From NCBI GenBank assembly GCA_013416795.1, contig RQSC01001312.1, positions 1-64,000 on the forward strand: a DNA stretch of 64,000 nt, written 5' to 3'. Below the pieces are notes generated by a model that was not told the origin of the DNA, did not search any database, and saw nothing but the letters and a program-made list of their open reading frames with translations. This DNA comes from Prasinococcaceae sp. CCMP 1430 (Eukaryota > Plantae > Prasinodermophyta). The translations under genes and the position numbers were made by a program. Numbering within the stretch: position 1 is the first letter of the stretch; the number at the start of each line of letters is the position of its first letter. Shown piece by piece: positions 18,216-57,418 of this stretch.

Positions 18216-18281
<66 letters not shown>

Positions 18282-18886: not shown

Positions 18887-18918
<32 letters not shown>

Positions 18919-18938
18919 GCACACACACAGGCACACAC

Positions 18939-19006
<68 letters not shown>

Positions 19007-19220: not shown

Positions 19221-19252
<32 letters not shown>

Positions 19253-19534
19253 GGGCGTCGACCGTGTGTGCACAGCGCGCGCGCGCTGTGCGAGTCCGCC
19301 CGGCGCCCGCGCCGCCGCGGAAAGCTCGACCCTTACCTCAGCAGGCACAGCAGGTACTTCGTGCGAGACGCCGGCGGGCGCCGACGAGGCCGCCTCGCTC
19401 GCCGACGGGCGCGCCGCCGCCCTCCCAACGCACATGGCCGGCGAGCACGCGAGCACGCCCCTCACCCCCTCCCACACGCACACACGAGGTGCCTGAACGT
19501 AGTACACCCCCGCACACCAGCATGCACACACACG

Positions 19535-19566
<32 letters not shown>

Positions 19567-19575
19567 CACACACAT
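17280..19575. repeat. Cluster of (GT)n/(CA)n microsatellites
   Basis: Tracts at ~17281-17335, 17610-17675, 17950-18280, 18820-19010, 19170-19250, 19525-19575. Confidence 0.95.
17708..18739 (-). CDS. OSCP1: OSCP1 (organic solute carrier partner 1) homologue, middle section missing
   Basis: MPLLVLNLGGEMLYVLERRL..AQ.IP...ELFRPQ..LAHSSIMRLS..SMDKLY.LMTM..KYQ (~18290-18739). Last exon 17708-17875 ends GDDLLDLMDQA*. No GT donor at the junction. Confidence 0.88.
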
Positions 19576-19973
19576 CCGCGCCGTGCGCGCGCGCGGCACA
19601 CGCGGCGTGAGGGCCGCCAAGGGGCGCGCACGCGCGCCCTTTCAGCTGATACCGCAACTAAATTATTCCGTTTATTATTTTAATAATACATGACAAATTA
19701 TATTTTATATCGCGTAATTACATGGAATTGAGGCGTTGCTCGCCGCGCGTGGAGTGCGCGCGCGAAAGCGCGGGCGTGTGGCGCGCGCGCGCCCGAAGGG
19801 GCGCTCCCTCCCTCCCTGCCGCTCCCGCTCCCGGGGCGCTCGGTCGGTAGCGGGGGGGGAGGTGGGGGGGGGAGGAGGTCCGGCCGCGCGCCACAGCGAC
19901 GGCCCGCCACGCCCGCGGCTCGAGGCAGGCACGACGGATTACGGCGGGCGCGTCAGCCCGTACCCGCGCGGCG

Positions 19974-21348: not shown

Positions 21349-21919
21349 GCGGCGCCAGCTGCTAGAGGCGGCAGGCCCTGATGCCCCAGGCCGCGAAGAG
21401 CGCCACCTCGCGCAAAGGCGGCGGCGGCGGCGGCGGCGCCAGCGCGTGCCTAGGATCTCACACACCACATGCCTACACCATACAACACGCACGTAGACAT
21501 TTTTTCTTCGTCCTCCCGCACCACGCACACCGCGTCGCAGGCGCGAGCCTCGAAGGGCGCCACCCCGCGCTGCCGCTGCTGCGGCGGCGGTGCAGTGGGG
21601 GGGATCTCGCACACACGCCTGCGCCACGCAACACGCGCGAGGACAATCATCCCTCCCCCTTCCCGTGCGCGCACGCACACACACGGGCACGAGCCTCGCG
21701 CGAGCGCGCAGGTGCAGCAGCCTCGCGCCGCGCCTGCTCGAGCTCTCCAACTCGCAGACGGACGGCGGCACGTTCACCCTCATTTCCGTTTGTGTAAATA
21801 AAGCAATTTGACGTCGAATATGCTCTCCCGTGGGTGAAAAGTTCAATGTTTGACGTGCGTTTCGGGTGCGGGTGGGGAGGTCTGGCTGCGCTCGCCACAG
21901 CGCGTGCGCTGAGCGCTGC

Positions 21920-22303
21920 ACGCGCACGCACACACACACACGCACACACACACACGCACACACACACAAACGCCTATACACGCACGCACACACACACACA
22001 TACACACACGCGTATACACGCGCACGCACGCCAGCGCGCGCTCACAGGTGGCCACGCTCGGCGCGCGCGCGCGCCCGCGCCCTGACGAGCATACACACAC
22101 ACAGGAGAGAGCACACACGCGCGCGCCCGCACGCACACACGCGAGCGCAGCGGATGGGCGCCTCGCGCGGCGTGGTGCCCGTTGACGTGGCGGTGCACTC
22201 GCGCGACGCCGGCGCTGCGCCGCGGCGCGAGCGCGTGTGGGTGGAGGTGCCCGCCGAGGCGGCGGCTGGTGCGTGCATGCGCGCGCGCACACACACACAG
22301 CAC

Positions 22304-22347
<44 letters not shown>

Positions 22348-22400
22348 CGCACACACACACACACACAACACGCCCACGCGCGCGCGCGCATGCACACACA
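21920..22400. repeat. (CA)n microsatellite tracts
   Basis: Tracts at ~21925-22025 and 22285-22400. Confidence 0.9.
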
Positions 22401-23615: not shown

Positions 23616-25946
23616 TTTTTTCACGCGCTTCGGGAGCGGGGGGCGTGTCCTCTGACCTCGACTTTTTGTATGGCGCGTATCAATACGCATGCGCAATCGA
23701 CGACGGTGCGCAGGCGCAGTATCACACTGTACGTACTGTACCATCGTGATGGTAAGAAGCCTCTTAGACAAATTATTAGTACTAGAGTCCCGCTACGAAT
23801 TAGTCCACACAGCCCACTATTAGCTAGCAGCTGGAATGCGTGCTTTTTGCGATGCCCCGTTTTTGATGGCAATTCCAGGTTGTGTAGTCTATTGGGATTT
23901 CGGAGCGGCTGGAATTGATCGATGTGGGTTTTGTTTGTCGGATTGTTTGACCGGCGGAGAAATTCCCGGGCCGGGCGCCGCGCGCCCGAGGGCGCGCGCG
24001 CGCGGGCCACACGGCGTCTGTGTCGAGGCGCACGCCGCNNNNNNNNNNNNNNNNNNNNNNNNNNNNNNNNNNNNNNNNNNNNNNNNNNNNNNNNNNNNNN
24101 NNNNNNNNNNNNNNNNNNNNNNNNNNNNNNNNNNNNNNNNNNNNNNNNNNNNNNNNNNNNNNNNNNNNNNNNNNNNNNNNNNNNNNNNNNNNNNNNNNNN
24201 NNNNNNNNNNNNNNNNNNNNNNNNNNNNNNNNNNNNNNNNNNNNNNNNNNNNNNNNNNNNNNNNNNNNNNNNNNNNNNNNNNNNNNNNNNNNNNNNNNNN
24301 NNNNNNNNNNNNNNNNNNNNNNNNNNNNNNNNNNNNNNNNNNNNNNNNNNNNNNNNNNNNNNNNNNNNNNNNNNNNNNNNNNNNNNNNNNNNNNNNNNNN
24401 NNNNNNNNNNNNNNNNNNNNNNNNNNNNNNNNNNNNNNNNNNNNNNNNNNNNNNNNNNNNNNNNNNNNNNNNNNNNNNNNNNNNNNNNNNNNNNNNNNNN
24501 NNNNNNNNNNNNNNNNNNNNNNNNNNNNNNNNNNNNNNNNNNNNNNNNNNNNNNNNNNNNNNNNNNNNNNNNNNNNNNNNNNNNNNNNNNNNNNNNNNNN
24601 NNGGGGGGGCACCCCACGGCGGCGGCCGGCGGCGCCGCGCCGTGTGGCATCGGTGTCGCCACGCCCACGCAACCCGGCGGCTGCGCTAAATAAAATAAAC
24701 CCTAAAATAACCCTAAACAGGTCGTGGGTACGTGCGGAGACCCCCCCCGCTGTGTTTTGCACGCCGCGTGCGTCACCCTCACCCCAGGCCGCGCTGCGTA
24801 GTGCTGCGCCGCACCGCCCGAGCCGGAGGTGCAGGTAATTCTATTGTACATGGAGAGCACTCAGTCGCTCAGTCGACGAGCGCCCCGCCGCCGCGCAGGC
24901 CGGCGCCACTCGGGACGCCTGCTGCGGCTCCCTCGAGGCCGAGGCCTCCGGCGGCGTGCGTGCGTGCCACCAGCCAGCCGCTACCCCACCACGCGCAACT
25001 CGGGCGCGTCGACGGCGAAGGAGCCGGGCATTCTCGCTCGGACTCGGATGCCTCCGGGTCCCACGCCAGCAGCTTCAAGGCGCCACACCATCGCGCCGGC
25101 GGGCCCGGCGAGGCCGTCGCCCGCGCCCACGGCCATGCCCGCGCCGCGCGCGCCCGCGTCGTCCTCAGGCTGCCGCCGCTGCACCCCCTTGGCTGCTCGC
25201 GCGGGAGGGCGCCCGAACGCGCGGCGGGCCAGGCCGCGCTCGCGGATATTTCCCCCGTTCGAAACGCATTTCGCATCCCAATCCGCGTTTTACCCCCCGT
25301 CCATTTGATTCATTCAGACGCGTGAGTCATTCGGAAGGGAGGTTTTGGAACGGCGCGGGTTTGGCCTCGCGGTGGGGATTCGGCGCGGGGCGGCGTAGGG
25401 TTTTGGGAGCGGCGGCTGCGCCTGCCCTGTGCGCGCGCGCGCGCTGCGGCGGCGGCCCGCTGCGGCAGCTCAACACCCGCCGCTGCGATGCNNNNNNNNN
25501 NNNNNNNNNNNNNNNNNNNNNNNNNNNNNNNNNNNNNNNNNNNNNNNNNNNNNNNNNNNNNNNNNNNNNNNNNNNNNNNNNNNNNNNNNNNNNNNNNNNN
25601 NNNNNNNNNNNNNNNNNNNNNNNNNNNNNNNNNNNNNNNNNNNNNNNNNNNNNNNNNNNNNNNNNNNNNNNNNNNNNNNNNNNNNNNNNNNNNNNNNNNN
25701 NNNNNNNNNNNNNNNNNNNNNNNNNNNNNNNNNNNNNNNNNNNNNNNNNNNNNNNNNNNNNNNNNNNNNNNNNNNNNNNNNNNNNNNNNNNNNNNNNNNN
25801 NNNNNNNNNNNNCGCGCGCGCGCGCGCGCGCCCACCGCGTCCGCAGTCCTCCGGAATCGCAAGCTAGAGCGTTACACTGCTCCTCGTATTAGTAGTTGGC
25901 GCCGTGGCCACACGCGCGCACTTTCGGACTCTGGCGCGAGCGCCGC

Positions 25947-29721: not shown

Positions 29722-31567
29722 ATGGCGGCGCTCGCGGCCGCGCGCGCGCGGCCGCGCGCGATCGAGGGCGCCAGGGCGCGGCGGGCGGCATGGAGGCGCT
29801 CGACGCGCTGGGCGCCGCGGACGCGGCGCTGGCCGCGCTGGGCGTGGACGGGGCGGGCCGCGGTCGGCGGCCGACCGGGGGCCTCAAGCCGACCGGGTCC
29901 ATTCGGCCGCCGCGGCCCTTGGACGACCTCATCCGCTACTCGGCCGCCGAAAAAATGAAGGCTCTGCCCTTCGACGACGGCACCGGCGATGACGAGATGC
30001 ACCCGCAGCTGAAGCGCCAGCCCCTGACGGCCGAGGGCGCGAAGTCGGCCTTCTGGGACTGGGCGCCCGCCGAGAGCGAGGCCGCGGAACCCGCGTTCCT
30101 CGACATCGCGTTCGAGTCGGCCGTGCTCGCGCCGAGCGCGACCTCGTCCACCGACGCGGGCCTGCCCGGCTGGGAGTCGGACCAACGCGACGCCACCCCG
30201 GACGCCGGCTGGGAGTCGTCGGACGAGGAGGACGCCGGCGCGGACACGAGCGACGTCCAGACCGTGGCGGGCGCGCCGTCGTACCTCGTCCTGAAGGCCA
30301 CCACGGCGAAAGTCGACGACTCGGCGAAGACCGATGCGCTCGACGCCGAGACGTTGGCGCACAAGAAGGAGTCGGAGGTCGCGCGCCTGGCGGAGAAGAA
30401 GGTGTCCGAGGTCGCGCGCGCGGTGGCGGAAGCGGCAATCGCTGCGGCGGTGCCAGACTCGGGCATCGAGGTGTGCGCCAAGACCGCCGACGGCACCACC
30501 ACGTGGACCAGCCGCGGCACTGAGGATGTGGGCGATGGCCGCCTGCGCCGTTGGACGCGCGTCCGAGGCGCTGCGGCGGACGGCTCCACCGAGTGGGAGG
30601 AGCGCTGGTGGGAGACGAGCGACCGCTTCGGCTACCGCGAGCTGGGTGCCGCCAAGGAGGGGCGCGACAGCAAGGGCACGGTCTGGGCAGAGTCCTGGAC
30701 CGAGGCCATCGACGAGGCCGCCGGCGGCCTCACGGCCGTGCAGCGCTCCGCCGACAAGCGCGGCGCCGACGCCGACGGCGCCGAGTGGCACGAGCGCTGG
30801 GGAGAGTACTACGAGGACGGTGGCGTCGCAGACAAGTGGGCCGACAAGTGGTCGAAGGTGGCGCCGGGCGCGTACGTGGCGCCGGGCCACGGCTCGTACT
30901 GGCACGAGCGATGGGGAGAGAGATACGAGGTACGCGTTGCGCGCGTGCGGGCTGCGTGACGCTCTGTGGATGTCCATGTGGGTGCCGTGCCAGCGCGCGC
31001 AGGTGTGCGTGCGCGAAAGTGCGCGCGCGCGTGTGTCTGTGTGCGCGCGCGCTGACGGCCCCGGCTCCGAACGCCCGCGCCCGCACTGCAGACTGGAGGG
31101 GAGATCCTCAAGTGGACTGATCGGTGGGCGGAGCGCCAGGCTGAGGGCTCCTCGTGGGGCGACAAGTGGGAGGAGAACCACGCCGCGGGCGGGGGAGGAT
31201 GGAAGCGGGGCGAGACGTGGAAGAAATGGGCCGACGGTGGGCAGTGGGTGCAGCAGTGGGCGGAGGAGTCGGCGTTTGGCGGCGTGCGCAAGTACGGCGG
31301 CAACAGCGACGGCCACAACTGGGACAGCTTCGAGGATGGCGCGCTCTGGGTGTCCGGGAATCACTTCAATTACGACATGGCACTCTCGCACTCGCCGTAC
31401 CTCCTCTCCGTGAAGCTGAGAGGCGAATACGAGCTGGAGCAGATGGCGGCGCCGACGCAGGCGGCGAAGGACGCGCCGACGTCGGGCGCGTTGGGCTCGG
31501 TGGCGATGTTTGGCGCCGCTGGACCCCCCGAGGGCGCCGACGGCTCCGCCGCCGCGCGCGCCGCTCG
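29722..31567 (+). CDS. LESV: LESV/ESV1-family Trp-rich starch-granule protein, 3' end in gap
   Basis: RWTRVRG..ADG..EWEERWWETSD.FGYRELG..K.GRD..G.VW.E.W, WHERWGE.Y, KWTDRWAER, WGDKWEE. Intron 30930-31091. Probable transit-peptide ATG at 29722 is out of frame with 29790 across a (CG)n tract. Confidence 0.92.
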
Positions 31568-32289
31568 NNNNNNNNNNNNNNNNNNNNNNNNNNNNNNNNN
31601 NNNNNNNNNNNNNNNNNNNNNNNNNNNNNNNNNNNNNNNNNNNNNNNNNNNNNNNNNNNNNNNNNNNNNNNNNNNNNNNNNNNNNNNNNNNNNNNNNNNN
31701 NNNNNNNNNNNNNNNNNNNNNNNNNNNNNNNNNNNNNNNNNNNNNNNNNNNNNNNNNNNNNNNNNNNNNNNNNNNNNNNNNNNNNNNNNNNNNNNNNNNN
31801 NNNNNNNNNNNNNNNNNNNNNNNNNNNNNNNNNNNNNNNNNNNNNNNNNNNNNNNNNNNNNNNNNNNNNNNNNNNNNNNNNNNNNNNNNNNNNNNNNNNN
31901 NNNNNNNNNNNNNNNNNNNNNNNNNNNNNNNNNNNNNNNNNNNNNNNNNNNNNNNNNNNNNNNNNNNNNNNNNNNNNNNNNNNNNNNNNNNNNNNNNNNN
32001 NNNNNNGGGCGCGTTGGTGGAGCGGCCTCCACGAGCTTGCGCGGCACCCGCGGCGCGCTGCGGGCGCGTACGAGGATGAAGTCGTGGGTTTTACACACGT
32101 CCTCCCGGAGTGACTGCGCGAGGGCCGCGTCGGCAGCCGCTGCGCGCGCGCGCGCGCGCGACGTGCCGCGCGGCGGCCGCGCACTCCGCGCGTGCGTATA
32201 GTGGGGTGGAGAGTAGAGTGCGTCCATACCGTCCCTTGGCATTGCATCTGGTACGATGCGCGCTAGCGAAGTGTCTCCATGGCGGGCTT

Positions 32290-34478: not shown

Positions 34479-35584
34479 CTATGCATCCTTTTCACGCGTG
34501 CCAACGGCCGGCGCGACCATCGCCAGGCTGCTCTGGCTCGCTGCGAACCGCTTCACTGACGCGGGCAGCCATCGTACCAACGCAGAAGCGACAACCGCCG
34601 ATCCTTGGTCCGCTCCTGCCAGCGCCGCCTGGCGGGCCTTGAGCGCATCGAATGTGTCACGCACATGCGGCAGCAGCCCAGGGGGCATGCGCAAGGGCGA
34701 GAAGAGCTCCGATAGGTCGCCTCGCCCCCAGCGCACGCGCAGCACGCTGTAGGCGTGTACCATTGCCATGTAGTCGAGCATGTCCTGAGGCATGTGCGCC
34801 TCCTCCACCAGGTGGGACTGCGCGCGCGCAGCCATATTATCGCCCGCACGAGCAAGTGAAAACCCACCACCACACGCACACATGCACCATCATGACGTTA
34901 GCTAGCACACGTACATCGGGGTACCGTCAATGCGGCCGCCAGGTTTAGCCTCTCAACTACTCCACTTACCTCTTGCTCGATGATCGTGGCCACGCGCTGG
35001 TGTGCTGGCAGGATGCTGGTCTCCATCCACTCGACGTATGACTCCCTGAGGGTGTCGTCCTCGGCAACGCGCCTCATCAATTCCGGCATGCCTTCCGGAT
35101 ACTTCACGCCGACGACGGAGCGGGCGAACAGGGAGAACACCGCGGTCGTCGAACTCAGAACTGCGAGGAGTGGCCCGTACAGGCGTTCGAGCTTGTGCGC
35201 GTGATGCGGCAAGAAAGCGGCGACAGTTGGTAGTCAGCACGTACGATGTGCAGAGGCGCTTACCACATGCGATACACGATGGAAGATGCCATCTATGCGC
35301 GACCACGAGCTACGCACGAACGAGGAGGATCTTTCGGCCGACGCGTACCTGCGCGTCTGCGCGTGCCAGCGCTGCGCGCCCGCACGAGTGCCGAGTCAGC
35401 GCGAGCATCGAACGCAGGGTCCGGTGTGCGCGAGGCCAGCGGCAGCGGCGCGGGCACTCGGTGACGCACCTGCCCGACGCCGCGCCGCGCGCAGCTCGAG
35501 GGCGCCCTGCGCCAGGTACGCCAGCGCGGCGCCCAGCAATGACAGCACCGAAAACAGCAAGGAGGGCGCCGCCTCCCCAAGCAT
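34479..35584 (-). CDS. Uncharacterised N-anchored membrane protein (QL.RLYGPL...W family)
   Basis: Exons 35470-35584, 35349-35371 (23 nt), 34970-35191, 34479-34817; all phases match and the three introns are GT-AG. N-terminal TM; motifs LYGPL, YVEWME..LP, HL.E, W.RGD.S, F..LK.RQ..L. Confidence 0.75.
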
Positions 35585-35847
35585 CCTGTGCGGGCGCACG
35601 GGCGCGCACCAAACGGCGGCCGCGCCCTCTGCTCCTCGAGACGCCTCGTCGCTCTCTCCGCCCCCCCTGCCAGCGCGCCGTGTGCCGTGCTCCCCAATGG
35701 CTCCCCCGCGCGCTTCCGACACGTTTGCGCGCAGCAGGGCGACGATTTTTGTACGCCCCCGCAGATGCCGTGAAATTGCTGTGTTGGCGCTGCAGCGCCA
35801 ACGGGTGGTGCCACATTGCGCGCACGCGCCGCGCCGCGCGCGCGCGC

Positions 35848-37410
35848 ATGCGCGCGCTGCGACGCATGAGCCCAGCGATGCGCGCTTGCCCCACCGCCGC
35901 GCTGCTCGCGTGCTTGGCCCAGGCCGGCACTGCGCTGCTGATGCTGCAGGCGGTGGTGGGTGTAGCCACAGGTGGTGAGGACGGAGAGGAGGGCCTGCCC
36001 CTGCCGCCGTGGATGCAGTCGGCCCCTGCTGGCCTGCCCCGCTGCGTGCCCCCGCCGCTCAGCGTCAACATTACCGCCGACGTCGCGGGCGGGTGCGACG
36101 CGGACGCGCCCGCAGCGTCGCTAGCGAAGGCGCGCGCGAGCGCGTGGCGCTGGGCGCCGCGCGTCAGCTTCCACCCAGACGAGCGGTACTTCCTGGACAG
36201 TGCGGCGCGCTACCTAGACGCCAGTGTGCTCTTTGGGCCCAACGGCGAGCACCTGGGCCCTGCCACCCCCGCCAACGTGCGTAGACAGATTGAGGCGGGC
36301 TTCGCGAATGCGACCTATACGGTCGCAACGTGGGACGTGGGCAACTGGAGTGGCATGCCGCTAGACTCTAACAACATGTCCACGGCACCGATTTACGCAA
36401 ACGTGTACCTCGGCCAGGAGGGACAATGGGTGTACAACTTCTGGCTCTATTACTCGTGGAACCCGCCAAGTTCTTTCCAGGTGAACCGCCAACGCCAAGA
36501 GGGCGGCCGGTGGGAGTGGCTGGACGTTTTGTTCGACGGCGGCTATGGCTTGCACGAGGGTGACTGGGAGAGCGTGACGGTTGAGATGTGCCCGGATCTC
36601 TCACGGCCTCTCAAGCAGGTGCTGCGAACGCACTGGTTCAATAGTGCGTACGACTGCACGAAGAACGAGTGCGAGTTCGCGCCGGGGAGCAACGGGACCA
36701 ATACGACGCACATGGACGTGCTCTGCGCCCTGGGCGGACACGCCTCCTACCAGCGCTCCAAGGAGGCGTCAGAGGTGATGTACTCGGTGGTAAACGCGTC
36801 ATCAGATCTCGTCATGCCCTGCGGCATCCATGCTTTGACGCGCACGGACCGCACGTGGGCGCCAGAGCAGGGCGCTGCGCACTTCCAGCCAACTGAGGAA
36901 AATGTGATAGTTCTGGACGCACCGAGCGATGTGGACTGGGGCGACGCCTCCGCAGATGCCAAGGCAACATGGCAACAGCTCGAAGCGGTCGGTCTGCACC
37001 CGTGGAGCGCGTATCCTGGCCGTTGGGGTCTCGCTTACTACCAGGACGTGCATCCCGTGGGCGCGCCAATGTGCTACACAGATGGCCAAAGTGACATCGT
37101 GCCGTGCAGCGAGCTGCGCCCCGAAGACGCGAGCGCGCTCCCCCAAAACATCTTCGACGTGACGTCGGCTCTCGCGAACGCCGACGAGGCCATTGCAAAC
37201 CAGTCGGCGGCGGACGGTGCGGCGCTCGTCGCCGCCTGCGGGCACGTGGACCCGTCCTTCTGGCCGAGGCTCGTGGCGTTCGGCCCCCTCGGACCTGCAT
37301 TCAAGACCTTCTGGGGCGAGGTTGAGGTCGCGGTGCCCTCGCCTCTCCAGGCAGATACCGGCGGCGTGCAGCTCGCGTGCCCCGACTACGCGCACCACGT
37401 CGCCGTGTAG
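35848..37410 (+). CDS. Vps62-like secreted protein
   Basis: Signal-like N-terminus, WAPRVSFHPDERYF, YNFWLYYSWN, LHEGDWESVTV, LGGHASY, W..YPGRWG. Intronless. Confidence 0.75.
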   Translation: MRALRRMSPAMRACPTAALLACLAQAGTALLMLQAVVGVATGGEDGEEGLPLPPWMQSAPAGLPRCVPPPLSVNITADVAGGCDADAPAASLAKARASAWRWAPRVSFHPDERYFLDSAARYLDASVLFGPNGEHLGPATPANVRRQIEAGFANATYTVATWDVGNWSGMPLDSNNMSTAPIYANVYLGQEGQWVYNFWLYYSWNPPSSFQVNRQRQEGGRWEWLDVLFDGGYGLHEGDWESVTVEMCPDLSRPLKQVLRTHWFNSAYDCTKNECEFAPGSNGTNTTHMDVLCALGGHASYQRSKEASEVMYSVVNASSDLVMPCGIHALTRTDRTWAPEQGAAHFQPTEENVIVLDAPSDVDWGDASADAKATWQQLEAVGLHPWSAYPGRWGLAYYQDVHPVGAPMCYTDGQSDIVPCSELRPEDASALPQNIFDVTSALANADEAIANQSAADGAALVAACGHVDPSFWPRLVAFGPLGPAFKTFWGEVEVAVPSPLQADTGGVQLACPDYAHHVAV

Positions 37411-37600: not shown

Positions 37601-40594
37601 TCACTCGCCACCACCCGCTGACGCAGCCCGCCCAGCACCGCGCTGCCACCTGCTGCGCCGCGTAGCGAGAAGGCGCACGGCGAGAGCCCCCCCACCAGCG
37701 AGAGCCGCGCCGCCGCTGCCGTCCAGCGGCGTGTCGCGAGGCACCGCCCTCGTCTCGCCGTCCTGGTCGAGCACCTCGACGCGCACCAGGTCGCCCTCGA
37801 CTAACGCCTGCGGCCCAAGCTTGGCCGCCGCGAAGAGATCTTCGGCAGTGCTGCCAGGGCGCATGGCGATCGCCAACGGGCAGGCCGCACGCGCCGCCTG
37901 CAGGACAGCGCCGTCCGCAGCTTTCCCCACGGCCCGCAGCCGCGCGACCTCGGCCGGTGCAGCGACGTCATCGGTGGTCGGGAAAGCAAACACGGGCGGC
38001 CGTAGCGCCACGGCCGCGTTGAGCGCCGCGCGGCAGCCGGTCAGCTCCGTGGCATAATCCGCGGCTAGTTTCTCGACCTGCTCGCGCCCCGTCATCTGCT
38101 CACCCGCCTCCACGTGTGCCTGGTACTCGGCACGCGCGCACACCGGCGTGCTGGCGACGCCCGGGTACGACTCGCGGATGCGCCGAATGTGCCGCCCCGA
38201 GCTGGGCAGGTCCGCCTTGTTGAGTGCCAGCACGCACGGGAAGCGCATCGCACAAAACGTCGCGACGATCGCGTGCAGGTCCGCAGGTGTCCATGAGGGC
38301 AGCCGCTTGACCGCCTCGGCCCATGTGCGGCCAAACCCCGCAAGCCTGACCGCTTCGAATGCCACCGACGTGGTGCAGTGGTAGCCGACGAAAAGCTGCA
38401 AGAAGTAGTCGCTCGGCTCGTCGGCTCGGCTCCGCATCAGCTTGCGCAACACCGTGGGCCACTTGTTCCTCACGTTCTGGTAGATCCACATGTGCAGCTC
38501 TAGTTGGACCCACTCGACATCGCGTGCTGGATCGCCCTGCGCGTCTGCGTCGGTGCCAGCCGCCGCGCCATCGCTGAGCGTGGTCCCCGACGCGTCAATC
38601 ACGTGGATCAAGCTGTCGGCATCGCACAAGTCGTTCAGAAAGGCGTTGCCCTTGCCGGCGCCCTGGCACGCACCCGGCACCAGCCCCGCGACGTCTTTTA
38701 TTGTCACGGGCAGTGTCAGCCGCTCGGCGTACCCTCGCTCGCCGCCCTCCCTGCACGGGTCGGCCTCGGCGGGTGGCGAGAAGAATGCTGCCGCGATGTT
38801 GGGCTCAATTGTCGTAAAGGGAAACGCCGCCATCCGCGCCGCTTCCGCCTCACTGTTGGGCAACGTCACCGCGCTGCGTGCATGAGTGTGTGTGTGCGTG
38901 CACGCGCGCGAGCGTAAGCATCCGCGCGCCAGTGCGCGCGCGTGCGCGTCCGTGCGCGCGCGCATGTGTGCGTGCGCGTGCATTGCGCGCGCGCTCGCAC
39001 TTGAAAAAGGTCGACTTTCCAGCGCTCGGCTTCCCGACCAGCCCGACTGTGTACTCCCAGCGTCCACGCCGGCGGTCGCTCGCACGCAACGCCGCGGCCG
39101 AATCGATGCCGCGCGCGCCCTCAATGGCGCGCTGAGCCAGCGCGCACTCCTCCTCGGGGTCGAGCTCATCGCACAGGAGGCGCGACTCAGCCACCACATC
39201 GCCGCTATCATCGGCGGTCTCGTCCATGACAGCAGCAGCGGCCAGAGCTTGAGCACCTGCCACCTGCTCACCATCCGCCGCCTCACCACCGCCGTGCTCA
39301 TCCAGCCACTCGGCCGCCCGCGCAGCCAGCTGGTACACCATCGCGTTGCCGCGCTCCTCTTCCGCGAGGCGGACTAGCTCTGCCAGCAGCGCCACGCGCG
39401 CTGCCTCGCTCAGCGCGTGCCCCTCGATGTCCAGCAGCGGCACCGCCGCCTGGCCACTGTCCACCCCGTCGCCGTGCGGATAGCCACGCGGGAAGGCCGC
39501 TGCCAGCCACACGCCCTCGGCGACGCGCACGCGCGCGAGCAGCATCGGCCCGGCCTCCTCTTCCTCGCCGCCGCCGCCGCCGCCGCAGCGTGCCTCGTCC
39601 TCCTCCTCGTCCGCGCGCGGGCAGTCGCCACCAACCGCCTGGTCTCCGAATATCGCTGTGAGCGCGCCGAGCTCCTCGCGCTGCGCCTCGCGCTCGTCTG
39701 GCAGCCACGCCCCGCACGCGGCCGCCAGCCGCGCCTCGCCCCCAGGGTCACCCGCATCGCCGCCGGCAGCCGCCTCGGCTGCGCGCGCGCGCAAGAACGC
39801 CTCGAGCGTTGCCACGTGCTCCGCGCGTTGCGGAAAGATATGCCCGCCGGCGTGCCGCACCACGTCGGCGCCGCTGCCGAACGCCGCCGCCAGCGCCTCA
39901 GACTCGTTCGGTGGCACGGCCTCGTCACCCTCGCCAACGAAGTGCAGCGAGCGCACGCCCGCCAGGTGCACGAGCGGCGCGCCACCCGTGGGCGGCTGCG
40001 GCGCGCCAGCAAGCACGGCAAAGCGCAACGCGGCGAGCGCGGGGAACGCAGCGGGGTCGGCGCGCGCCGCCGCGAGCGCCGCTGCCGCCAGCGCGCCTCC
40101 CTGCGTGCGTGGTCGTGGGCGCGCCGCCGGGATTAGCTCCAACACGCGCGCGCATGACCCACGCGTATGCACGCACACGCACGCGAGAGTGCGCACGCAT
40201 ACACACGCGCACGCCCACGCTTCCGCCTCGGCGCGACGCCTACCTGCGAGAAGCCCAACACGCCGTCGAAGGGCGGCACGCGCTGCAGCTCGCCCTCGAG
40301 CCGCCGCACCGCCTCGTCAGCGCCGCCCCCGCCTCCATACCACTGCAGCCCGCCGCCGGCCGCGCCGCCGGTCGCGTCCGGGAAGCGCGTCGCGCCGAGC
40401 ACACCGCGCAGCCGCCACGGCGGCCGGCGGCGGCGCCCACGGCGCGGCGCGCCGCAACTGAGCGGTGTGGCGCGGGGCGACGCGCCGAAGGGCCGTGAGG
40501 AGCAGAGGGCGGGGATGAGGGGGGGGCGGGAGGGGTTGGAGGTGGCGTCTGTGCGTGCGCACGTGCGTGCGTGCGCGCTATGCGACAAAGGCAT
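37601..40594 (-). CDS. Fusion protein: FSH1/OVCA2 serine hydrolase + RWD domain + Ygr210/Obg-family GTPase with TGS-like end
   Basis: Exons ~40244-40594 (start uncertain), 39001-40100, 37601-38873, phases consistent. PFDGVLGFSQ|GG, HFVGEGDEAV, HAGGH; QREELGALTAIF, FPRGYP, GNAMVYQL; GLVGKPSAGKSTFF|N, FPFTTIEPN, DVAGLVPGA, LNKAD. Confidence 0.85.
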
Positions 40595-40595
40595 T

Positions 40596-40650
40596 AAACC
40601 CTAATTACAATTGTGCAGTAGTTGACCCTAATAATGATAACCTTAACCTC
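40596..40650. promoter_or_regulatory. Telo-box-like motifs in a compact divergent promoter
   Basis: AAACCCTA at 40596-40603 plus GACCCTAA and AACCTTAAC, between the fusion gene (-) and PDK1 (+). Confidence 0.5.
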
Positions 40651-47903: not shown

Positions 47904-48568
47904 TTACTTGATGTGCGCGTTGGGCACGCTCGACGCGCACGCGCCCGCGGCGCACTTGAGCGGCACGCCCTTGTAGCACGCGGCGCCCTGGGCGTCGGTG
48001 GTGAGGTCGGGCGCGACCTTCTCGAACTGCTTCTTCTTGGGCACGAGCACCTCGGCGGGCTCGCCGTCGAAGCCCTCGGCGGTGACGCGCTCGCCGAGCG
48101 CGGCGCCCTCGGGCGGGACCACGAAGTCGACCACCGTGTGGTCGGCGTTCGAGGCGCACAGCACCATGCCCTGCGACGCCACGTCGCGCATCTTGGACGG
48201 CTTGACGTTGGCCAGCACGAGCACGCGCGCGCCCAGCATCTGCGCCTCCGTCTTGAACTTCACGAGGCCCGACACCACCTGCCGCGGCCCGCTCTCCTCG
48301 CCCATGTCGATCTTCTCCACCCACAGCGAGTCCGCGTTGGGGTGGCGCTCCACGGACACGATCTTGCCCACGCGGATGTTCAGCACGCTCACGTCGACCT
48401 CCTTGGCCTTCATGTCGCCGCCCTTGGCCGCCTTGGCGTCGCCGCCCTGGGCGGCCGCCTTGGCGGCCTTCTTCGCGGCCTTCTCCGCCTTCTTGTTGGC
48501 CATCTTCTTGCCCTCGGCGGCCGCGCCCGCCGCCGCGGGCGCGGTGGCCGCCGCCGCGGCCTTCGCCT
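47904..48568 (-). CDS. EMAP II-like OB-fold tRNA-binding domain (Arc1p/AIMP1 or MetRS/TyrRS C-terminus), N-terminus in gap
   Basis: LNIRVGKIVSVERHPNADSLWVEKID.GE..PRQVVSGL, NVKPSKMRDVASQGMVLCAS, PKKKQFEKV. Confidence 0.9.
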
Positions 48569-49469
48569 NNNNNNNNNNNNNNNNNNNNNNNNNNNNNNNN
48601 NNNNNNNNNNNNNNNNNNNNNNNNNNNNNNNNNNNNNNNNNNNNNNNNNNNNNNNNNNNNNNNNNNNNNNNNNNNNNNNNNNNNNNNNNNNNNNNNNNNN
48701 NNNNNNNNNNNNNNNNNNNNNNNNNNNNNNNNNNNNNNNNNNNNNNNNNNNNNNNNNNNNNNNNNNNNNNNNNNNNNNNNNNNNNNNNNNNNNNNNNNNN
48801 NNNNNNNNNNNNNNNNNNNNNNNNNNNNNNNNNNNNNNNNNNNNNNNNNNNNNNNNNNNNNNNNNNNNNNNNNNNNNNNNNNNNNNNNNNNNNNNNNNNN
48901 NNNNNNNNNNNNNNNNNNNNNNNNNNNNNNNNNNNNNNNNNNNNNNNNNNNNNNNNNNNNNNNNNNNNNNNNNNNNNNNNNNNNNNNNNNNNNNNNNNNN
49001 NNNNNNNNNNNNNNNNNNNNNNNNNNNNNNNNNNNNNNNNNNNNNNNNNNNNNNNNNNNNNNNNNNNNNNNNNNNNNNNNNNNNNNNNNNNNNNNNNNNN
49101 NNNNNNNNNNNNNNNNNNNNNNNNNNNNNNNNNNNNNNNNNNNNNNNNNNNNNNNNNNNNNNNNNNNNNNNNNNNNNNNNNNNNNNNNNNNNNNNNNNNN
49201 NNNNNNNNNNNNNNNNNNNNNNNNNNNNNNNNNNNNNNNNNNNNNNNNNNNNNNNNNNNNNNNNNNNNNNNNNNNNNNNNNNNNNNNNNNNNNNNNNNNN
49301 NNNNNNNNNNNNNNNNNNNNNNNNNNNNNNNNNNNNNNNNNNNNNNNNNNNNNNNNNNNNNNNNNNNNNNNNNNNNNNNNNNNNNNNNNNNNNNNNNNNN
49401 NNNNNNNNNNNNNNNNNNNNNNNNNNNNNNNNNNNNNNNNNNNNNNNNNNNNNNNNNNNNNNNNNNNNN

Positions 49470-49529
<60 letters not shown>

Positions 49530-49610
49530 CACACACACACGCACACACGCACGCACGCGCGTGCTGGCGAGCCGTGCCGCCCGCCGCCGCCAGCCTCGGG
49601 CCCTCCCCAC

Positions 49611-52902: not shown

Positions 52903-55283
52903 TCACGCATCGTCTCCATCGATGTCGTCAAGCGTGCGCGTGCCAGTTGGCAGTTCGAATGTCGACGCCTCAAGGCCGGCGCTGGTGGTGACGCTCGAGC
53001 CCTGAACAGACGCACACGAGCGAGCGACCGTGCCGGCTGCGCCATCGGCGGTACCCGCGTATATGCTGCAATCGATGGCCCTCCGGGAGTCGTCGTCAGT
53101 GCCCAAGTCGCACAGGTCGAGCGGTTGCAGAATGTCCTGCCAATTGAAGCTGCCATCGTCCGTACGGCTGGTTTCCCCATCGTCGCCAACCTCGCCTACG
53201 CGCTCCAGGGCCGCTTCCCAGGCGGCGCGCACCACGCCACGCTTGACCCGATTATCGACGGGTCCGCGCTTGCCGAGCGCGACGTGACGGTTCACTTCAA
53301 GTAGCCAGGGCGTGCCGCTCTGATCAAGGAGAAGATCCACGCCGAGCACCTTGGGCACAGCCGCGCGGTCGGCGTCGGCCGCGCTCACGTCGCCTACCTT
53401 CTCTTCAAGTGACGAGCTCGCCGCCCGCAGCGCCACAGCGCATGCCCGCACGCACGCCTGCCATATCGTGGCGTAGTGGAGTCCCCGGGCGGCCACCAGC
53501 TTGGCGAGCGCGCTCAGCGGGCGTGTGTTACCCTCCGCCTCGGCCGTAGCGAGGCTGTTGCTGCCAGCGACAAAGTAGTCGGCGTGAGTGTTGTTGAACG
53601 ACTGGTTGGTGATGTGCGCGTGCATGTCTATGTCGGCTGCCTCTTGCGCCTGCGCGTGCTCGCCCTCGTGCGGCGCGTAAGGCGCCGCCGCCAGAAGGCA
53701 AAGCCCCGTGCGGGCCACGTACGCACGCAGCGGCGCGAGACGCGTAGTCACTATGTAAAGGCGCAGCGAGAACTTGCGACCGTCGAGCAACAGAGGGCGC
53801 TCCACGTAGCGCTGCACGACGCAATCCGCGGCGCTCACGAGCGCCTGTCGTGCTCGCGTGCTGTGCAGCTCACCAAGCAGCACGTTGCCAGCACCGCCAT
53901 GGCCCATGCGGTCCTTCAGAATCCAGAGCGGCGCGCGCACGCCGTTGCCTGCGTGCGCGCGCACAGCGGCATCATGTGCACGGAGCGCGGTCGCCTGGTC
54001 GGGCATCTCGAATGTCGCCGGCGCTACCACCGCGCACGCGTGCGGGAGGCCGGGCGCGCCGAGGATGCGGTGCAGGCCGACCTTGTCGTCAATGCTCCTC
54101 CACTGCGGCGCCTCGAGCTTGTTGTTGGCCGCGCACAATGAGTCTTGGGGCTCGCAGCCCGCGTCGAAGCGCCCGGCATGTGCCTCACGCAGCAGCGCGC
54201 GAAGCGCCGCGAGGGCGCTCGTTCGCTCGTTCGCAAGCAGTTCCAGCTCTTGGCTACCATCAGCGCTGCCACCCATGGTGCCTGCGCCCCCGGCCGCGCG
54301 CACCGCGAGCGCCGCCGCATCGCATGCACGTACGAGCATGAACGCCCATGGCGCCTGCCTCGGCGCGCGCTCGTGCGCTGCGGCGAGAACCCGCACCGCC
54401 TCGAGCGCGTCCGCCCGCCTGCCGAGCGCGAGCAGCGCCCATCCACGCATCCCCAAGGGGTACGCGCCGAACGCCGCCGCGAGCGGCGTGCCCCCCACCA
54501 CCTCGGCGTGCAGGCGCGCGTGCGAAAGCGCTCCCACGCCGCGACGCGCGCACTGATTACTGCTGGGGTCGCTGACGTCGACGCCACGCTCGCACCTGTC
54601 TTCGACAGTGTGCACCGCCGCACGCCCAGGCTCGCGCAGCGCGTCGCGCGCGCGCCCCATGGCGTGCATGCTCTCGGCCACATACACAGCAAGCCGTGCA
54701 TCGAGCGGATCAGCGTCTCGCGCGCGGCCGAAGGCTTCGAGCGCGCCCGCGGGGTCGCCGAGCGCACTGAGCACCACGCCGAGCTTGCGCAGTGCGGGCA
54801 CGAAGCGCGGCGCCTTTCGCACGGCTGCACGCAGCCACGGCAGGCCGTCGCGATTTCGCCCGGCGCCGTGCAGCTCGGCGCCCAGGTTCACATCCGCGAG
54901 GAACATGGCGTCATCGTGGCGCAGCGCGAGCCGCCACAGCTCGCGGGCTCGCACGCGGTTGCCGGCGTCGAGCGCTTCGTCTGCGGCGACCATGCAGCGC
55001 GCAGCATCGGGCGACACCGCGGCTGCGCCGCTCAGCGCGCCAGCGCCGCTGCCTCGCGCCGCTGCGTTGAGCGCGTCCTCAGCGACAGCAAGTAGCGCGC
55101 GCGCGGGTGCGGCGTCGCCGGCATGCGCACTGCTCGAGATTGCGCGACCGCACGCGAGTACCGCGCCGAGCGCGTGTCCGCCGGCGTGCAGTGCGCTCGC
55201 GAGGCGGTAGTACGCGCGCGCGAGCGCGGCGGCGCCCTCCGCGCCGCCGCGCGCGAACGCCACCGCCTCCTGCGCGGCCGCGG
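52903..55283 (-). CDS. TPR-repeat + tubulin-tyrosine-ligase-like (ATP-grasp) protein, N-terminus in gap
   Basis: Several TPR-like helices, then DDKVGL, WILK, QRYVERPLLLDGRKFSLRLY, HITN, GVDLLLD..G.PWLLEVN. Confidence 0.88.
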
Positions 55284-55974
55284 NNNNNNNNNNNNNNNNN
55301 NNNNNNNNNNNNNNNNNNNNNNNNNNNNNNNNNNNNNNNNNNNNNNNNNNNNNNNNNNNNNNNNNNNNNNNNNNNNNNNNNNNNNNNNNNNNNNNNNNNN
55401 NNNNNNNNNNNNNNNNNNNNNNNNNNNNNNNNNNNNNNNNNNNNNNNNNNNNNNNNNNNNNNNNNNNNNNNNNNNNNNNNNNNNNNNNNNNNNNNNNNNN
55501 NNNNNNNNNNNNNNNNNNNNNNNNNNNNNNNNNNNNNNNNNNNNNNNNNNNNNNNNNNNNNNNNNNNNNNNNNNNNNNNNNNNNNNNNNNNNNNNNNNNN
55601 NNNNNNNNNNNNNNNNNNNNNNNNNNNNNNNNNNNNNNNNNNNNNNNNNNNNNNNNNNNNNNNNNNNNNNNNNNNNNNNNNNNNNNNNNNNNNNNNNNNN
55701 NNNNNNNNNNNNNNNNNNNNNNNNNNNNNNNNNNNNNNNNNNNNNNNNNNNNNNNNNNNNNNNNNNNNNNNNNNNNNNNNNNNNNNNNNNNNNNNNNNNN
55801 NNNNNNNNNNNNNNNNNNNNNNNNNNNNNNNNNNNNNNNNNNNNNNNNNNNNNNNNNNNNNNNNNNNNNNNNNNNNNNNNNNNNNNNNNNNNNNNNNNNN
55901 NNNNNNNNNNNNNNNNNNNNNNNNNNNNNNNNNNNNNNNNNNNNNNNNNNNNNNNNNNNNNNNNNNNNNNNNNN

Positions 55975-57418
55975 CCGCCGGCGCCCGCGGCGGCGCCGAG
56001 GGCCTCCGTGGCGCTCGCCGCGAGGCCCGGGAGCGCGGGCGGCGTGGGCGGCGGTGCGTAGCGCACCGAGAAGATGTCGGCGCCCGCGTCCAGCAGCTCG
56101 AGCAGGTAGTCGTCGGCCGTCTTCAGCGCATCGCACAGGCCCTTCTCCAGGGCGTCCTCGCCGAACCACGTCTCGCCGGTGGCCACCTCGTCGAGGTCCA
56201 ACTGCGGTCGGTTCTTCCCAACGAAGCCGCGGAAGAGCTTCAGGATGTCCGCCACGTCCTCCTTGCTCTTTGCGAGGTCCTCCTCGGTGACCTTCTTCGT
56301 CGGCGTCAGCGTGCGCTTGTACTTGCCCGCCGTCACCGTCGTGAACTCGATGCCCTCGTCCTTGAGGCGCTTGTACACGTTCGGCTGCTCCGAGATGACG
56401 CCGATGGAGCCCAGCACGGCGAAGGGCGAGGCGTTGATGGTGTCGCCCACGCACGCCATCATGTACCCGCCCGAGGCCGCCACCTGCTCGACGTTGATGG
56501 TGAGCTTGATGCCGGCGGCCTTGATGCGCGCCAGCTGCGCGGCCGCGAGGCCGTAGCCGGTGACGGTGCCGCCGCCGGAGGACAGCACCACGACGCACTC
56601 ATCACCGCGCTCGCCGTCGGCGCCGCGGATGACGGCGGTGACCTCCTCGCGCAGTGCGTTCACCTGCGACGCCTGGATGTCGCCCTTGAAGGTCAGCACG
56701 AACACGCGCTTGGGCCCCGCCGCGGCGGCGTCCGCGCCCGCGGCGTGCGCCTCCCGACGCGGCAGCAGCGAGGGCGCAGCGAAGCCCGGCGCGGACTCGG
56801 ACGCCAGCAGGGCCGTCAGGCGCTCGCGCTGCTCGCCGTCGAGCGCGGCCGCCACCGCGGAGACGTAGCGCGCCTCGGCGCTCGCGCGCGCCTTGAGCGC
56901 CTTCTCCATCTCCTTCTCCAGCGGGCTAGCGCCAAAGGACGGCATCTTGAAGCCGCCCTCGCCGTCACCCGCCTCGCCGTCGCTGGCGCCGTCGCCCTTG
57001 CCGTCCGCCTTCTTCTTGGCGGCCTTGGCGACGGCCTCCGCGCGCATCGCGCGTGCCACGCGGTCGAGCTCGGCGTTTGCGGCCGCGCCCGCGCGCGCCC
57101 ACTGCGCGTCGGCCGCGTCGAGCGCGGCGAGAGCCTCCGTGTCGAGGCTCTGCACGAGCGCGGGGCCGACGCGGCGCTCGAGCGCCCGGCGACGCGCGGC
57201 GGAGAGCGCCGCGCCGCCGCCGGCGGTGGCTTTCTGCAGCGAGTACGAGTAGCTGTCCAGCCTCGCGTTGAGCTTCTCCACCTTGAGGTACTCGGTCGGC
57301 GCGCCGCGCGCGGCCTTCTTGCCGCCGAGGCCCAGGCCGCCCAGGCCTCCGCCGCCCCGCCCGCCGGGCGCGCGGCCGAGCTCCTCGTCATCGAGCTCGG
57401 CCGCGCGCGCGAGGGCGG
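55975..57418 (-). CDS. sohB: S49 serine peptidase, SohB type; both ends in gaps
   Basis: VFVL.FKGDIQAS.V..LREEVTA, LSSGGGTVTGYGLAA.QL, VAASGGYMMAC, GSIGV, TAGKYKRTLT, ATGETWFG. Confidence 0.9.

What the first reader, a model, noticed from the sequence alone, without database searches (positions are those of the whole stretch)
37601..40594. Three-domain fusion: FSH1 serine hydrolase - RWD - Ygr210/Obg GTPase
Seen: the hydrolase second half (Asp and His of the triad), the whole RWD domain and the GTPase G1 motif lie in one uninterrupted exon (39001-40100), and both flanking introns restore GFSQ|GG and STFF|N in the right phase. Established: the GTPase matches the archaeal/fungal Ygr210 branch of COG0012 (FPFTTIEPN, DVAGLVPGA, W+..N+..KW, TGS-like end), and related DRG/Rbg GTPases work on ribosomes with the RWD proteins DFRP2/Gir2 and Gcn2-type RWD partners. 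Inference: a single-chain GTPase-RWD module carrying an esterase, possibly acting on stalled ribosomes or peptidyl/acyl esters. I know of no description of this architecture. Caveat: the usual N-terminal LCLHG motif of FSH1 was not found.
Basis: partly seen in the sequence, partly recalled or inferred. Interest (0 to 1): 0.75.

Follow-up and report, generated by a model that had tools for sequence, protein, structure and literature searches.

The report
Hydrolase-RWD-GTPase gene, known family
This alga has a real three-exon gene joining an esterase-type hydrolase, an RWD docking domain and a Ygr210-type GTPase in one protein, but the same design is already annotated (never studied) in many other eukaryotes, so it is an ordinary member of an uncharacterised family.

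Summary
Observation confirmed. On the minus strand, three exons (40594-40244, 40100-39001, 38873-37601) with GT-AG introns encode FSH1 hydrolase, RWD and Ygr210-type Obg GTPase. A 58-69% identical relative (L001/P0001) has one uninterrupted ORF across both intron sites. The Ser/Asp/His triad, RWD YP motif and G1-G4 motifs are all present.

The novelty claim fails. A word search found 85 eukaryotic proteins with FSH1 plus this GTPase; 44 of them also carry a recorded RWD hit. They include kinetoplastids, chytrids, dinoflagellates and green algae. Molluscs have RWD-GTPase only, yeasts the GTPase alone. Sources auto-annotate it ("Serine hydrolase (FSH1)/50S ribosome-binding GTPase..."). One paper notes the same architecture in Chlamydomonas Cre12.g538200, deleted in a viable strain. 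I found no functional study.

The family's RWD profile is closest to RWDD1/DFRP2 and GCN2, both Gcn1-binding RWDs. This fits, but does not prove, recruitment to ribosomes.

One real oddity: this copy lacks the N-terminal LCLHG strand and first helix, which the relative has. Homology starts only at RLRGV. Real loss versus assembly fault is unresolved.

The scan also noted this same stretch in another window of the same genome.

The parts
40244..40594 (-). Exon 1. It holds the only in-frame ATG (40594-40592) and a roughly 60-codon Pro/Arg/Ala/Ser-rich leader without a coding-like GC2 signature. The FSH1 middle part follows, from RLRGV to the nucleophile elbow GFSQ. The catalytic Ser codon is 40247-40249.
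40101..40243 (-). Intron 1 (143 nt, GT...AG, phase 0). It splits GFSQ|GG.
   Evidence: The relative's ORF is continuous here.
39001..40100 (-). Exon 2. It encodes the FSH1 C-terminal half, the RWD domain, an acidic linker with a conserved pre-G helix, and the GTPase P-loop.
39810..40097 (-). FSH1 profile positions 111-209. The catalytic Asp codon is 39924-39926 (GEGDEAV). The catalytic His codon is 39840-39842 (GGHIFP).
   Evidence: The triad is assigned by homology to OVCA2 Ser117-Asp179-His206 (PMC7077851).
39303..39689 (-). RWD domain (Pfam PF05773, full profile 1-112), including the conserved YP motif.
39009..39035 (-). G1 / P-loop, GKPSAGKST.
38874..39000 (-). Intron 2 (127 nt, GT...AG, phase 2). 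It splits STFF|N.
   Evidence: The relative's ORF is continuous here, with Asn at the junction.
37601..38873 (-). Exon 3, the rest of the Ygr210-type GTPase and its C-terminal domain.
- G2 (FPFTTIEPN): 38798-38824
- G3 (DVAG): 38684-38695
- G4 (NKAD): 38210-38221
- Stop codon: 37601-37603
40596..40604 (+). Telo-box-like AAACCCTAA in the short divergent promoter, 2 nt from the ATG. Whether it belongs to this gene's regulation is unknown.
   Evidence: 2 matches in the window, 0.03 expected

Best explanation
**Shown.** The locus is one spliced gene for a roughly 900-residue protein. The order is an N-terminal FSH1/OVCA2-type alpha/beta serine hydrolase, a middle RWD domain of the RWDD1/GCN2 type, and a C-terminal Ygr210-type Obg-family GTPase with its helical insert and C-terminal beta-rich domain. 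It belongs to a widespread eukaryotic family with the same domain order. Across that family the hydrolase triad, the RWD YP motif and the G1-G4 motifs are nearly invariant.

**Inferred mechanism.**
- The GTPase acts as a nucleotide switch on the translation machinery, as its Obg-family relatives YchF/OLA1 and DRG/Rbg do.
- The covalently attached RWD domain replaces a separate adaptor such as Gir2/DFRP2 and docks the protein to Gcn1 on ribosomes.
- The hydrolase cleaves an ester or thioester substrate there, possibly a hydrophobic acyl ester, as for FSH1/OVCA2.

**Peculiar to this copy.** The first strand (LCLHG motif) and first helix of the hydrolase are absent. The esterase may therefore be weakened, or the 5' end of the assembly may be faulty.

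My confidence in the identity and family assignment is about 0.95. My confidence in the ribosome/Gcn1 mechanism is about 0.3.
For: **Gene model.**
- GT-AG introns in the right phase.
- A continuous ORF in the relative across both junctions.

**Domains.**
- Pfam and NCBIfam hits on each exon.
- Nearest solved structure for exon 3 is 1wxq, the Pyrococcus horikoshii GTP-binding protein, at 2.2e-24.

**Family.**
- 85 of 120 listed homologues carry FSH1 plus the GTPase.
- 44 of those also carry a precomputed RWD hit.
- 10 more carry RWD plus GTPase without FSH1.
- Several are transcriptome ORFs marked complete (MMETSP, EukProt), so the fusion is transcribed as one mRNA elsewhere.

**Conservation in 83 full-length members.** Invariant or at least 90% conserved: GFSxG, Asp159, His186, RWD Glu239 and Tyr291-Pro292, GKPSAGKST, TT, DVAG, NKxD. 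The window's exons carry all of these.

**Family profile against solved structures.**
- 1wxq 7.7e-73
- Yeast Fsh1 (1ycd) 8.7e-22
- RWDD1 (2ebm) 6.8e-13
- GCN2 RWD domains 3.5e-11 to 5.2e-9

**AlphaFold2 model of homologue P0008.** Mean pLDDT 85.7, pTM 0.65, three folded domains with two low-confidence linkers. Foldseek matches it to 1wxq (TM 0.80), YchF, Fsh1 (TM 0.69) and acyl-protein thioesterases.

**Literature.**
- Gir2/Dfrp2 RWD binds Gcn1 and may recruit Rbg2 to ribosomes (PMC3510508).
- OVCA2 and FSH1 prefer long-chain alkyl esters and resemble APTs (PMC7077851).
Against: - No experiment on any family member was found.
- The ribosome/Gcn1 link rests only on domain homology.
- No DFRP-type segment was detected between the RWD and the GTPase.
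- FSH1/OVCA2 chemistry (hydrophobic esters) does not obviously fit a peptidyl-tRNA substrate.
- The Chlamydomonas gene with this architecture is deleted in the viable lf5-2 strain, so it is not essential there.
- In this window the FSH1 match covers only profile positions 84-209 of 211. The relative's exon 1 matches positions 4-43.
- Pfam YGR210-like_G4 on exon 3 scores 24.2 bits, just under the 24.7 cut-off, and matches only the first 35 profile positions.
Confidence: 0.55

Rival explanations
1. In this species the hydrolase domain is a crippled remnant. A roughly 24-codon loss removed strand 1, the HG motif and helix A. The protein then works essentially as an RWD-GTPase, like the mollusc proteins that lack FSH1 altogether.
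For: - Protein homology to the relative begins only at RLRGV.
- The window reads RRRRPPW-RLRGV where the relative has RRRRPP-LRLLCLHG...TMR-RLRGV.
- No LCLHG piece exists in any frame of the 64-kb window.
- The 5' 60 codons lack the low-GC2 coding signature.
- RWD-GTPase proteins without FSH1 exist in molluscs and others.
Against: - Ser, Asp and His and the whole C-terminal half of the hydrolase are well conserved between the window and the relative. That argues for continued selection on the domain.
- The environmental variant P0121 (97% identical) also keeps them.
Confidence: 0.3
2. The missing N-terminal strand is an assembly or sequence fault in a very GC-rich repetitive stretch. A collapse between two similar CGG/CTGCGC-rich segments is one possibility. 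The real protein would then have a complete FSH1 domain.
For: - The flanks of the apparent deletion are similar GC-rich repeats, and the junction is in frame.
- The only ATG lies 59 codons upstream of the junction (codon 60, Trp, just before RLRGV) in sequence that looks non-coding.
- Other agents' notes report a faulty join elsewhere in this draft assembly (untested by me).
Against: - There are no Ns or obvious breaks at the site.
- No independent copy of the 5' end could be read.
Confidence: 0.25
3. The family has nothing to do with ribosomes. It is a GTP-regulated lipid esterase or acyl-protein thioesterase, and the RWD domain is a general protein-protein adaptor of the E2-like fold.
For: - FSH1 and OVCA2 prefer long-chain alkyl esters and resemble APT1/2.
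- Foldseek places the hydrolase domain next to APT1/2, LYPLAL1 and carboxylesterases.
- RWD domains also occur in RNF25 and RWDD3, which are not ribosome factors and which also match the profile.
Against: - The best RWD matches are RWDD1 and GCN2, the Gcn1-binding class.
- The relatives of Ygr210 in the Obg family (YchF/OLA1, DRG, Obg, Nog1) are ribosome-linked.
Confidence: 0.3
4. The three domains belong to separate adjacent genes wrongly read as one.
For: None beyond the presence of introns.
Against: - The P-loop (G1) lies in exon 2 and G2-G4 lie in exon 3, so the GTPase is incomplete without splicing.
- The relative encodes everything from the FSH1 C-half to G3 in one ORF.
- There are dozens of full-length single-chain homologues, including complete transcriptome ORFs.
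Confidence: 0.02

Closest known systems
Database-annotated FSH1-RWD-Ygr210 GTPase proteins, e.g. Chlamydomonas Cre12.g538200, the Leishmania/Trypanosoma 'Serine hydrolase (FSH1)/50S ribosome-binding GTPase/GTPase of unknown function C-terminal' proteins, and the Blyttiomyces, Zopfochytrium, Polarella, Effrenium and Tetraselmis proteins
   Same: - Same domain order and similar length (about 850-970 aa).
- 32-39% identity over 87-99% of exon 3.
- Same conserved triad, YP motif and G motifs.
   Different: - The window's copy lacks the N-terminal LCLHG strand and first helix that full-length members have. In members, FSH1 profile coverage runs from position 3-7 to 207-210. Here it runs 84-209.
- It sits on a long branch in the GTPase tree.
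S. cerevisiae Ygr210c and archaeal Ygr210-type GTPases (structure 1wxq, P. horikoshii)
   Same: - G domain with NKxD and the helical insert with the W..N...KW signature.
- YGR210-like_G4 region and C-terminal beta-rich domain.
- 1wxq is the best solved-structure match.
   Different: - Yeast and archaeal proteins are GTPase-only, about 400-430 aa (P0116-P0120).
- They have no hydrolase and no RWD domain.
- Their function is also unknown in the literature searched.
DRG2/Rbg2 with DFRP2/RWDD1/Gir2
   Same: An Obg-family GTPase working with an RWD domain. The family's RWD profile is closest to RWDD1. The Gir2 RWD binds Gcn1.
   Different: - There the RWD protein is a separate polypeptide bound through a dfrp domain. 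Here the RWD is covalently N-terminal to the GTPase, and no DFRP_C match was found.
- The GTPase belongs to a different subfamily (Ygr210, not DRG).
- DRG complexes carry no hydrolase.
FSH1/OVCA2 serine hydrolases (yeast Fsh1 structure 1ycd, human OVCA2)
   Same: Alpha/beta hydrolase fold with a GxSxG nucleophile and an Asp and His triad.
   Different: Those are stand-alone enzymes of about 230-240 aa. Here the domain is fused to RWD and a GTPase, and in this window it is N-terminally incomplete.
Mollusc 'uncharacterized GTP-binding protein YGR210C-like' proteins (Pecten, Argopecten, Mizuhopecten, Batillaria)
   Same: RWD directly followed by the Ygr210-type GTPase.
   Different: No FSH1 domain, and a length of about 440-570 aa.

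Membership tests
FSH1 serine hydrolase family (Pfam PF03959) | Profile match above the gathering score | tested here: met
   Exon 2 scores 47.5 bits against a cut-off of 21 (profile 111-209). Exon 1 adds profile 84-110 at 14-16 bits.
FSH1 serine hydrolase family (Pfam PF03959) | GxSxG nucleophile elbow plus catalytic Asp and His | tested here: met
   GFSQ|GG spans intron 1, Asp lies in GEGDEAV, and His lies in GGHIFP. All three align to the invariant or near-invariant family columns S100, D159 and H186. The triad is defined in OVCA2.
FSH1 serine hydrolase family (Pfam PF03959) | Complete fold, including the N-terminal strand with the (L)C(L)HG motif and the first helix | tested here: not met
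   - An HMM of family N-termini against all six frames of the window finds nothing.
- The relative's exon 1 matches FSH1 positions 4-43, but the window does not.
- Homology starts at RLRGV.
RWD domain (Pfam PF05773) | Profile match above the gathering score over the whole domain | tested here: met
   31.1 bits against a cut-off of 22.8, covering profile 1-112.
RWD domain (Pfam PF05773) | Conserved YP motif of the RWD/UBC-like fold | tested here: met
   The window's GYP aligns to the at-least-90%-conserved columns Y291-P292.
RWD domain (Pfam PF05773) | Binding to Gcn1 (the functional class of GCN2, Gir2/RWDD1 and IMPACT) | not testable with these tools
   Only ranked similarity is available: RWDD1 6.8e-13, GCN2 RWD domains 3.5e-11 to 5.2e-9, IMPACT 1.1e-3.
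Ygr210 subfamily of Obg-like GTPases | G1-G4 motifs with NKxD (GTP-type G4, unlike YchF) | tested here: met
   GKPSAGKST, FPFTTIEPN, DVAGLVPGA and NKAD are all present.
Ygr210 subfamily of Obg-like GTPases | YGR210-like_G4 domain (PF08438) and PRK09602 profile above their cut-offs | tested here: inconclusive
   - PF08438 scores 24.2 bits against a cut-off of 24.7 and matches only the first 35 of 108 positions.
- PRK09602 scores 139.7 bits against a cut-off of 387, on exon 3 alone, which lacks G1.
- Full-length homologues pass PF08438 at 53-74 bits.
Ygr210 subfamily of Obg-like GTPases | Closest solved relative is the archaeal Ygr210-type protein rather than YchF, Obg or DRG | tested here: met
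   1wxq scores 2.2e-24 against the next best, OLA1, at 2.9e-9. The family profile gives 7.7e-73.
Ygr210 subfamily of Obg-like GTPases | C-terminal beta-rich (TGS-like) domain | tested here: inconclusive
   - No Pfam TGS hit on exon 3.
- Exon 3 aligns with the family to the very end, including the G..VR.E columns.
- The model of homologue P0008 shows a beta-rich C-terminal domain.
- The window's own protein was not modelled.
FSH1-RWD-Ygr210 fusion family (e.g. Cre12.g538200, kinetoplastid 'Serine hydrolase/GTPase-like protein') | Domain order hydrolase - RWD - GTPase in one polypeptide | tested here: met
   Phase-correct splicing, a continuous ORF in the relative and the same order in homologues.

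The most novel reading that the evidence does not exclude
The FSH1-RWD-Ygr210 family is an ancient eukaryotic translation-surveillance enzyme. The RWD domain would dock it to Gcn1 on stalled or collided ribosomes. The GTPase would sense the ribosome state. The serine hydrolase would cleave an ester there, on a nascent chain, a tRNA ester or a modified translation factor.

The fusion would then act as a 'Rosetta stone'. It would link the stand-alone, function-unknown FSH1/OVCA2 hydrolases and Ygr210c to translation. From memory and untested: human OVCA2 shares its locus with the diphthamide gene DPH1.
Probability: 0.15. Interest if true: 0.7.

Novelty: new member of a known kind. Interest (0 to 1): 0.3.

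Why it matters
For this window alone it matters little. The gene is one more member of a family that databases already annotate automatically.

The family itself is worth a specialist's attention for three reasons:
- It is widespread across eukaryotic supergroups.
- All three catalytic or binding signatures are conserved.
- No functional study was found.

The family also ties two orphan protein groups, Ygr210-type GTPases and FSH1/OVCA2 hydrolases, to an RWD domain of the Gcn1-binding type. Genetic systems that carry it already exist: Chlamydomonas (a viable deletion strain), Leishmania and Trypanosoma. The hypothesis is therefore directly testable.

The missing N-terminal strand in this copy is a small natural experiment on whether the esterase is dispensable, or else a flag for an assembly fault.

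Tried and rejected
1. **Missing LCLHG exon.** I built an HMM of family N-termini and searched all six frames of the whole window with filters off. It found only the known GFSQ piece. Three-frame translation of the 220 nt upstream of the ATG showed nothing.
2. **Frameshift rescue.** A reading of LC in one frame plus PHG in another around 40480-40500 got no alignment support in any frame. I treat it as chance.
3. **DFRP-like linker.** I tested whether the RWD-GTPase linker is a DFRP domain. There was no DFRP_C hit in nine homologues at E up to 1, nor in exon 2 at E up to 0.1.
4. **Archaeal outgroup or archaeal fusions.** The genome-contig scan returned only two weak bacterial matches (29-35% identity) to the GTPase core. 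The tree therefore could not be rooted.
5. **GTPase-domain tree of 46 sequences.** Deep branches are poorly resolved. Yeast GTPase-only proteins sit on a very long branch next to the mollusc RWD-GTPase proteins (support 82). The direction of domain gain or loss cannot be inferred.
6. **Independent copy of the 5' end.** P0121 (97% identical) covers only exon 2. The exon-1 ORF search found nothing.
7. **Single-sequence search of exon 2 against solved structures.** It found nothing useful. The family profile was needed.
8. **Pfam scan of the whole 83-row alignment.** Precomputed Pfam columns were counted instead.
9. The structure prediction used the natural full-length homologue P0008. The large representative-protein search was not used, because relatives were plentiful.
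Full report
**What is in the sequence.** The finding lies in about 70% GC eukaryotic DNA. On the minus strand I read three exons.
- Exon 1 is 40594-40244. It ends with the codons for GFSQ, followed by a gtaggc donor.
- A 143-nt intron ends in cag at 40101.
- Exon 2 is 40100-39001. It begins GGALAA and ends with STFF plus two bases, followed by a gtgcgag donor.
- A 127-nt intron ends in cag at 38874.
- Exon 3 is 38873-37601. Its first base completes an Asn codon and gives STFF-N-AVT. It runs to TGA at 37603-37601.

Read without splicing, both introns run into stops. The gene is bounded by a convergent 746-codon ORF ending at 37410 and by a divergent protein-kinase gene starting at 40817.

**Domain content, exon by exon.** I never made, searched or folded a joined protein.
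- Exon 1 matches FSH1 profile positions 84-110, weakly.
- Exon 2 matches FSH1 positions 111-209 (2.4e-12) and a full RWD domain (2.8e-7, above the gathering score).
- Exon 3 matches YGR210-like_G4 and MMR_HSR1.
- NCBIfam PRK09602 ('YchF-related putative GTPase') matches the P-loop at the end of exon 2 (positions 3-19) and exon 3 (positions 26-258, 1.1e-40).
- The closest solved structure to exon 3 is 1wxq, the Pyrococcus horikoshii Ygr210-type protein, at 2.2e-24. It is well ahead of OLA1/YchF.

**Comparative proof of the single chain.** The closest relative is P0001, on an ENA metagenome contig fetched as L001.
- It has one uninterrupted ORF from the nucleophile elbow to beyond G3.
- Exon 2 aligns to its residues 13-368 (58% identity).
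- Exon 3 aligns from residue 370 (69% identity).
- Residue 369 is the Asn of the split codon.
- The relative has no intron at either window position, and has one of its own before PPFDG.

A second protein, P0121, is 97% identical to exon 2. It ends in the same intron-2 read-through tail, so the same or a nearly identical species occurs in environmental data.

**The architecture is not new.** I searched with the exon-3 part of a mechanical ORF, so that candidates of 311-990 aa were allowed. This listed 120 homologues.
- 85 carry FSH1 plus the GTPase.
- 44 of those also have a recorded RWD hit.
- 10 more have RWD plus GTPase without FSH1.
- Named sources include Leishmania, Trypanosoma, Leptomonas, Angomonas and Phytomonas.
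- They also include the chytrids Blyttiomyces and Zopfochytrium and the dinoflagellates Polarella and Effrenium.
- The green algae Tetraselmis and Sanguina, and MMETSP/EukProt transcriptome ORFs marked complete, are listed too.
- Scallops and a snail have RWD-GTPase only. Yeasts have the bare GTPase.
- Sources already name some of these 'Serine hydrolase (FSH1)/50S ribosome-binding GTPase/GTPase of unknown function C-terminal' or 'Serine hydrolase/GTPase-like protein'.

The only paper I found that mentions the architecture is PMC12711092. [quoted passage not shown] The gene is co-deleted with CDKL5 in the viable lf5-2 strain. Searches for YGR210C and for combinations of the domain names found no functional study.

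**Conservation and structure of the family.** In an alignment of 83 full-length members, these are invariant or at least 90% conserved:
- the GFSxG elbow, the catalytic Asp and His;
- an RWD Glu and the YP motif;
- the P-loop GKPSAGKST, the G2 threonines, DVAG and NKxD.

Added as separate fragments, the window's exons carry all of them.

The family profile hits solved structures as follows:
- 1wxq at 7.7e-73;
- yeast Fsh1 (1ycd) at 8.7e-22;
- for the RWD part, RWDD1 (the DRG2 partner DFRP2) first at 6.8e-13, then GCN2 RWD domains (3.5e-11 to 5.2e-9), RNF25, RWDD3 and IMPACT.

An AlphaFold2 model of the natural homologue P0008 has mean pLDDT 85.7 and pTM 0.65. It shows three folded domains, low-confidence linkers at 212-225 and 352-370, and a conserved helix just before the G domain. 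Foldseek matches the model to 1wxq (TM 0.80), YchF, Fsh1 (TM 0.69) and acyl-protein thioesterases. No solved structure has the combined architecture.

**The one peculiarity of this copy.** Full-length members match FSH1 from profile position 3-7 onward. The relative's exon 1 matches positions 4-43 and contains LRLLCLHG. In the window:
- Protein homology to the relative begins only at RLRGV.
- Just upstream the window reads RRRRPPW, where the relative has RRRRPP followed by about 24 residues (strand 1, the HG motif, helix A) before RLRGV.
- No LCLHG-like piece exists in any frame of the 64-kb window or in the 220 nt up to the neighbouring gene.
- The only in-frame ATG is at 40594. The 60 codons after it lack the low-GC2 signature of the other exons.

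I cannot decide between a real in-frame loss and an assembly collapse in this GC-rich repeat.

**How it probably works.**
- Shown: it is a spliced single-chain hydrolase-RWD-GTPase of a conserved family.
- Inferred from family knowledge: Obg-family relatives (YchF/OLA1, DRG/Rbg, Obg, Nog1) act on ribosomes.
- Inferred: the RWD class that this domain most resembles binds Gcn1, and in Gir2 it is proposed to bring Rbg2 to translating ribosomes.
- Inferred: FSH1/OVCA2 enzymes are Ser-His-Asp esterases that prefer long hydrophobic esters and resemble acyl-protein thioesterases.

My best reading is a GTP-switched, RWD-docked esterase acting at or near the translation machinery. I put that at about 0.3. 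A GTP-regulated lipid or acyl-protein esterase unrelated to ribosomes is an equally live rival. No DFRP-type segment was found.

**Evolution.** A GTPase-domain tree of 46 sequences puts the window near green-algal members on a long branch. It leaves deep branches unresolved. Without an archaeal outgroup it cannot show whether yeasts lost the N-terminal domains.

**Organism.** Other agents' notes name the genome as Prasinoderma coloniale. I did not test this. The high GC content and the green-algal neighbours in the tree are compatible with it.

**Verdict.** The finding is a new member of a database-known, functionally unstudied family, and not a new architecture. The same stretch was also noted by the scan in an overlapping window of this genome.

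Noticed in passing
window 23951-24700, 25401-25900, 31501-32100, 48501-49600, 55201-56050: Sharp, very AT-rich islands (13-26% GC, 0.5-1.1 kb) sit inside DNA of about 70% GC. They share no blastn similarity with one another.
   Followed up: partly
window 40596-40604 and 24697-24705: The plant-type telo-box AAACCCTAA occurs twice, against 0.03 expected. One copy lies 2 nt from the ATG of this gene, in the 220-nt divergent promoter shared with a kinase gene. The other lies in an AT-rich island.
   Followed up: partly
window 40817 onward, + strand: A divergently transcribed, intron-containing protein-kinase gene lies here. I read its sequence as PDK1-like AGC type. I did not search it.
   Followed up: no
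window 35170-37410, + strand: A long uninterrupted ORF (746 codons as listed) converges on the 3' end of the gene. Its C-terminal two thirds look like a real secreted or surface protein with many N-x-S/T sites. I did not search it.
   Followed up: no
window 17281-22371: Long (GT)n, (CA)n and (CACG)n arrays, up to 333 bp. Similar CACG/CGTG-rich simple sequence fills both introns of the gene.
   Followed up: no
L001 5505-8720: The relative's gene has different intron positions. One lies before PPFDG and at least one lies inside the GTPase after G3. It has none at the window's two sites. Its neighbours (thiamine pyrophosphokinase, GST) show no synteny with the window.
   Followed up: partly
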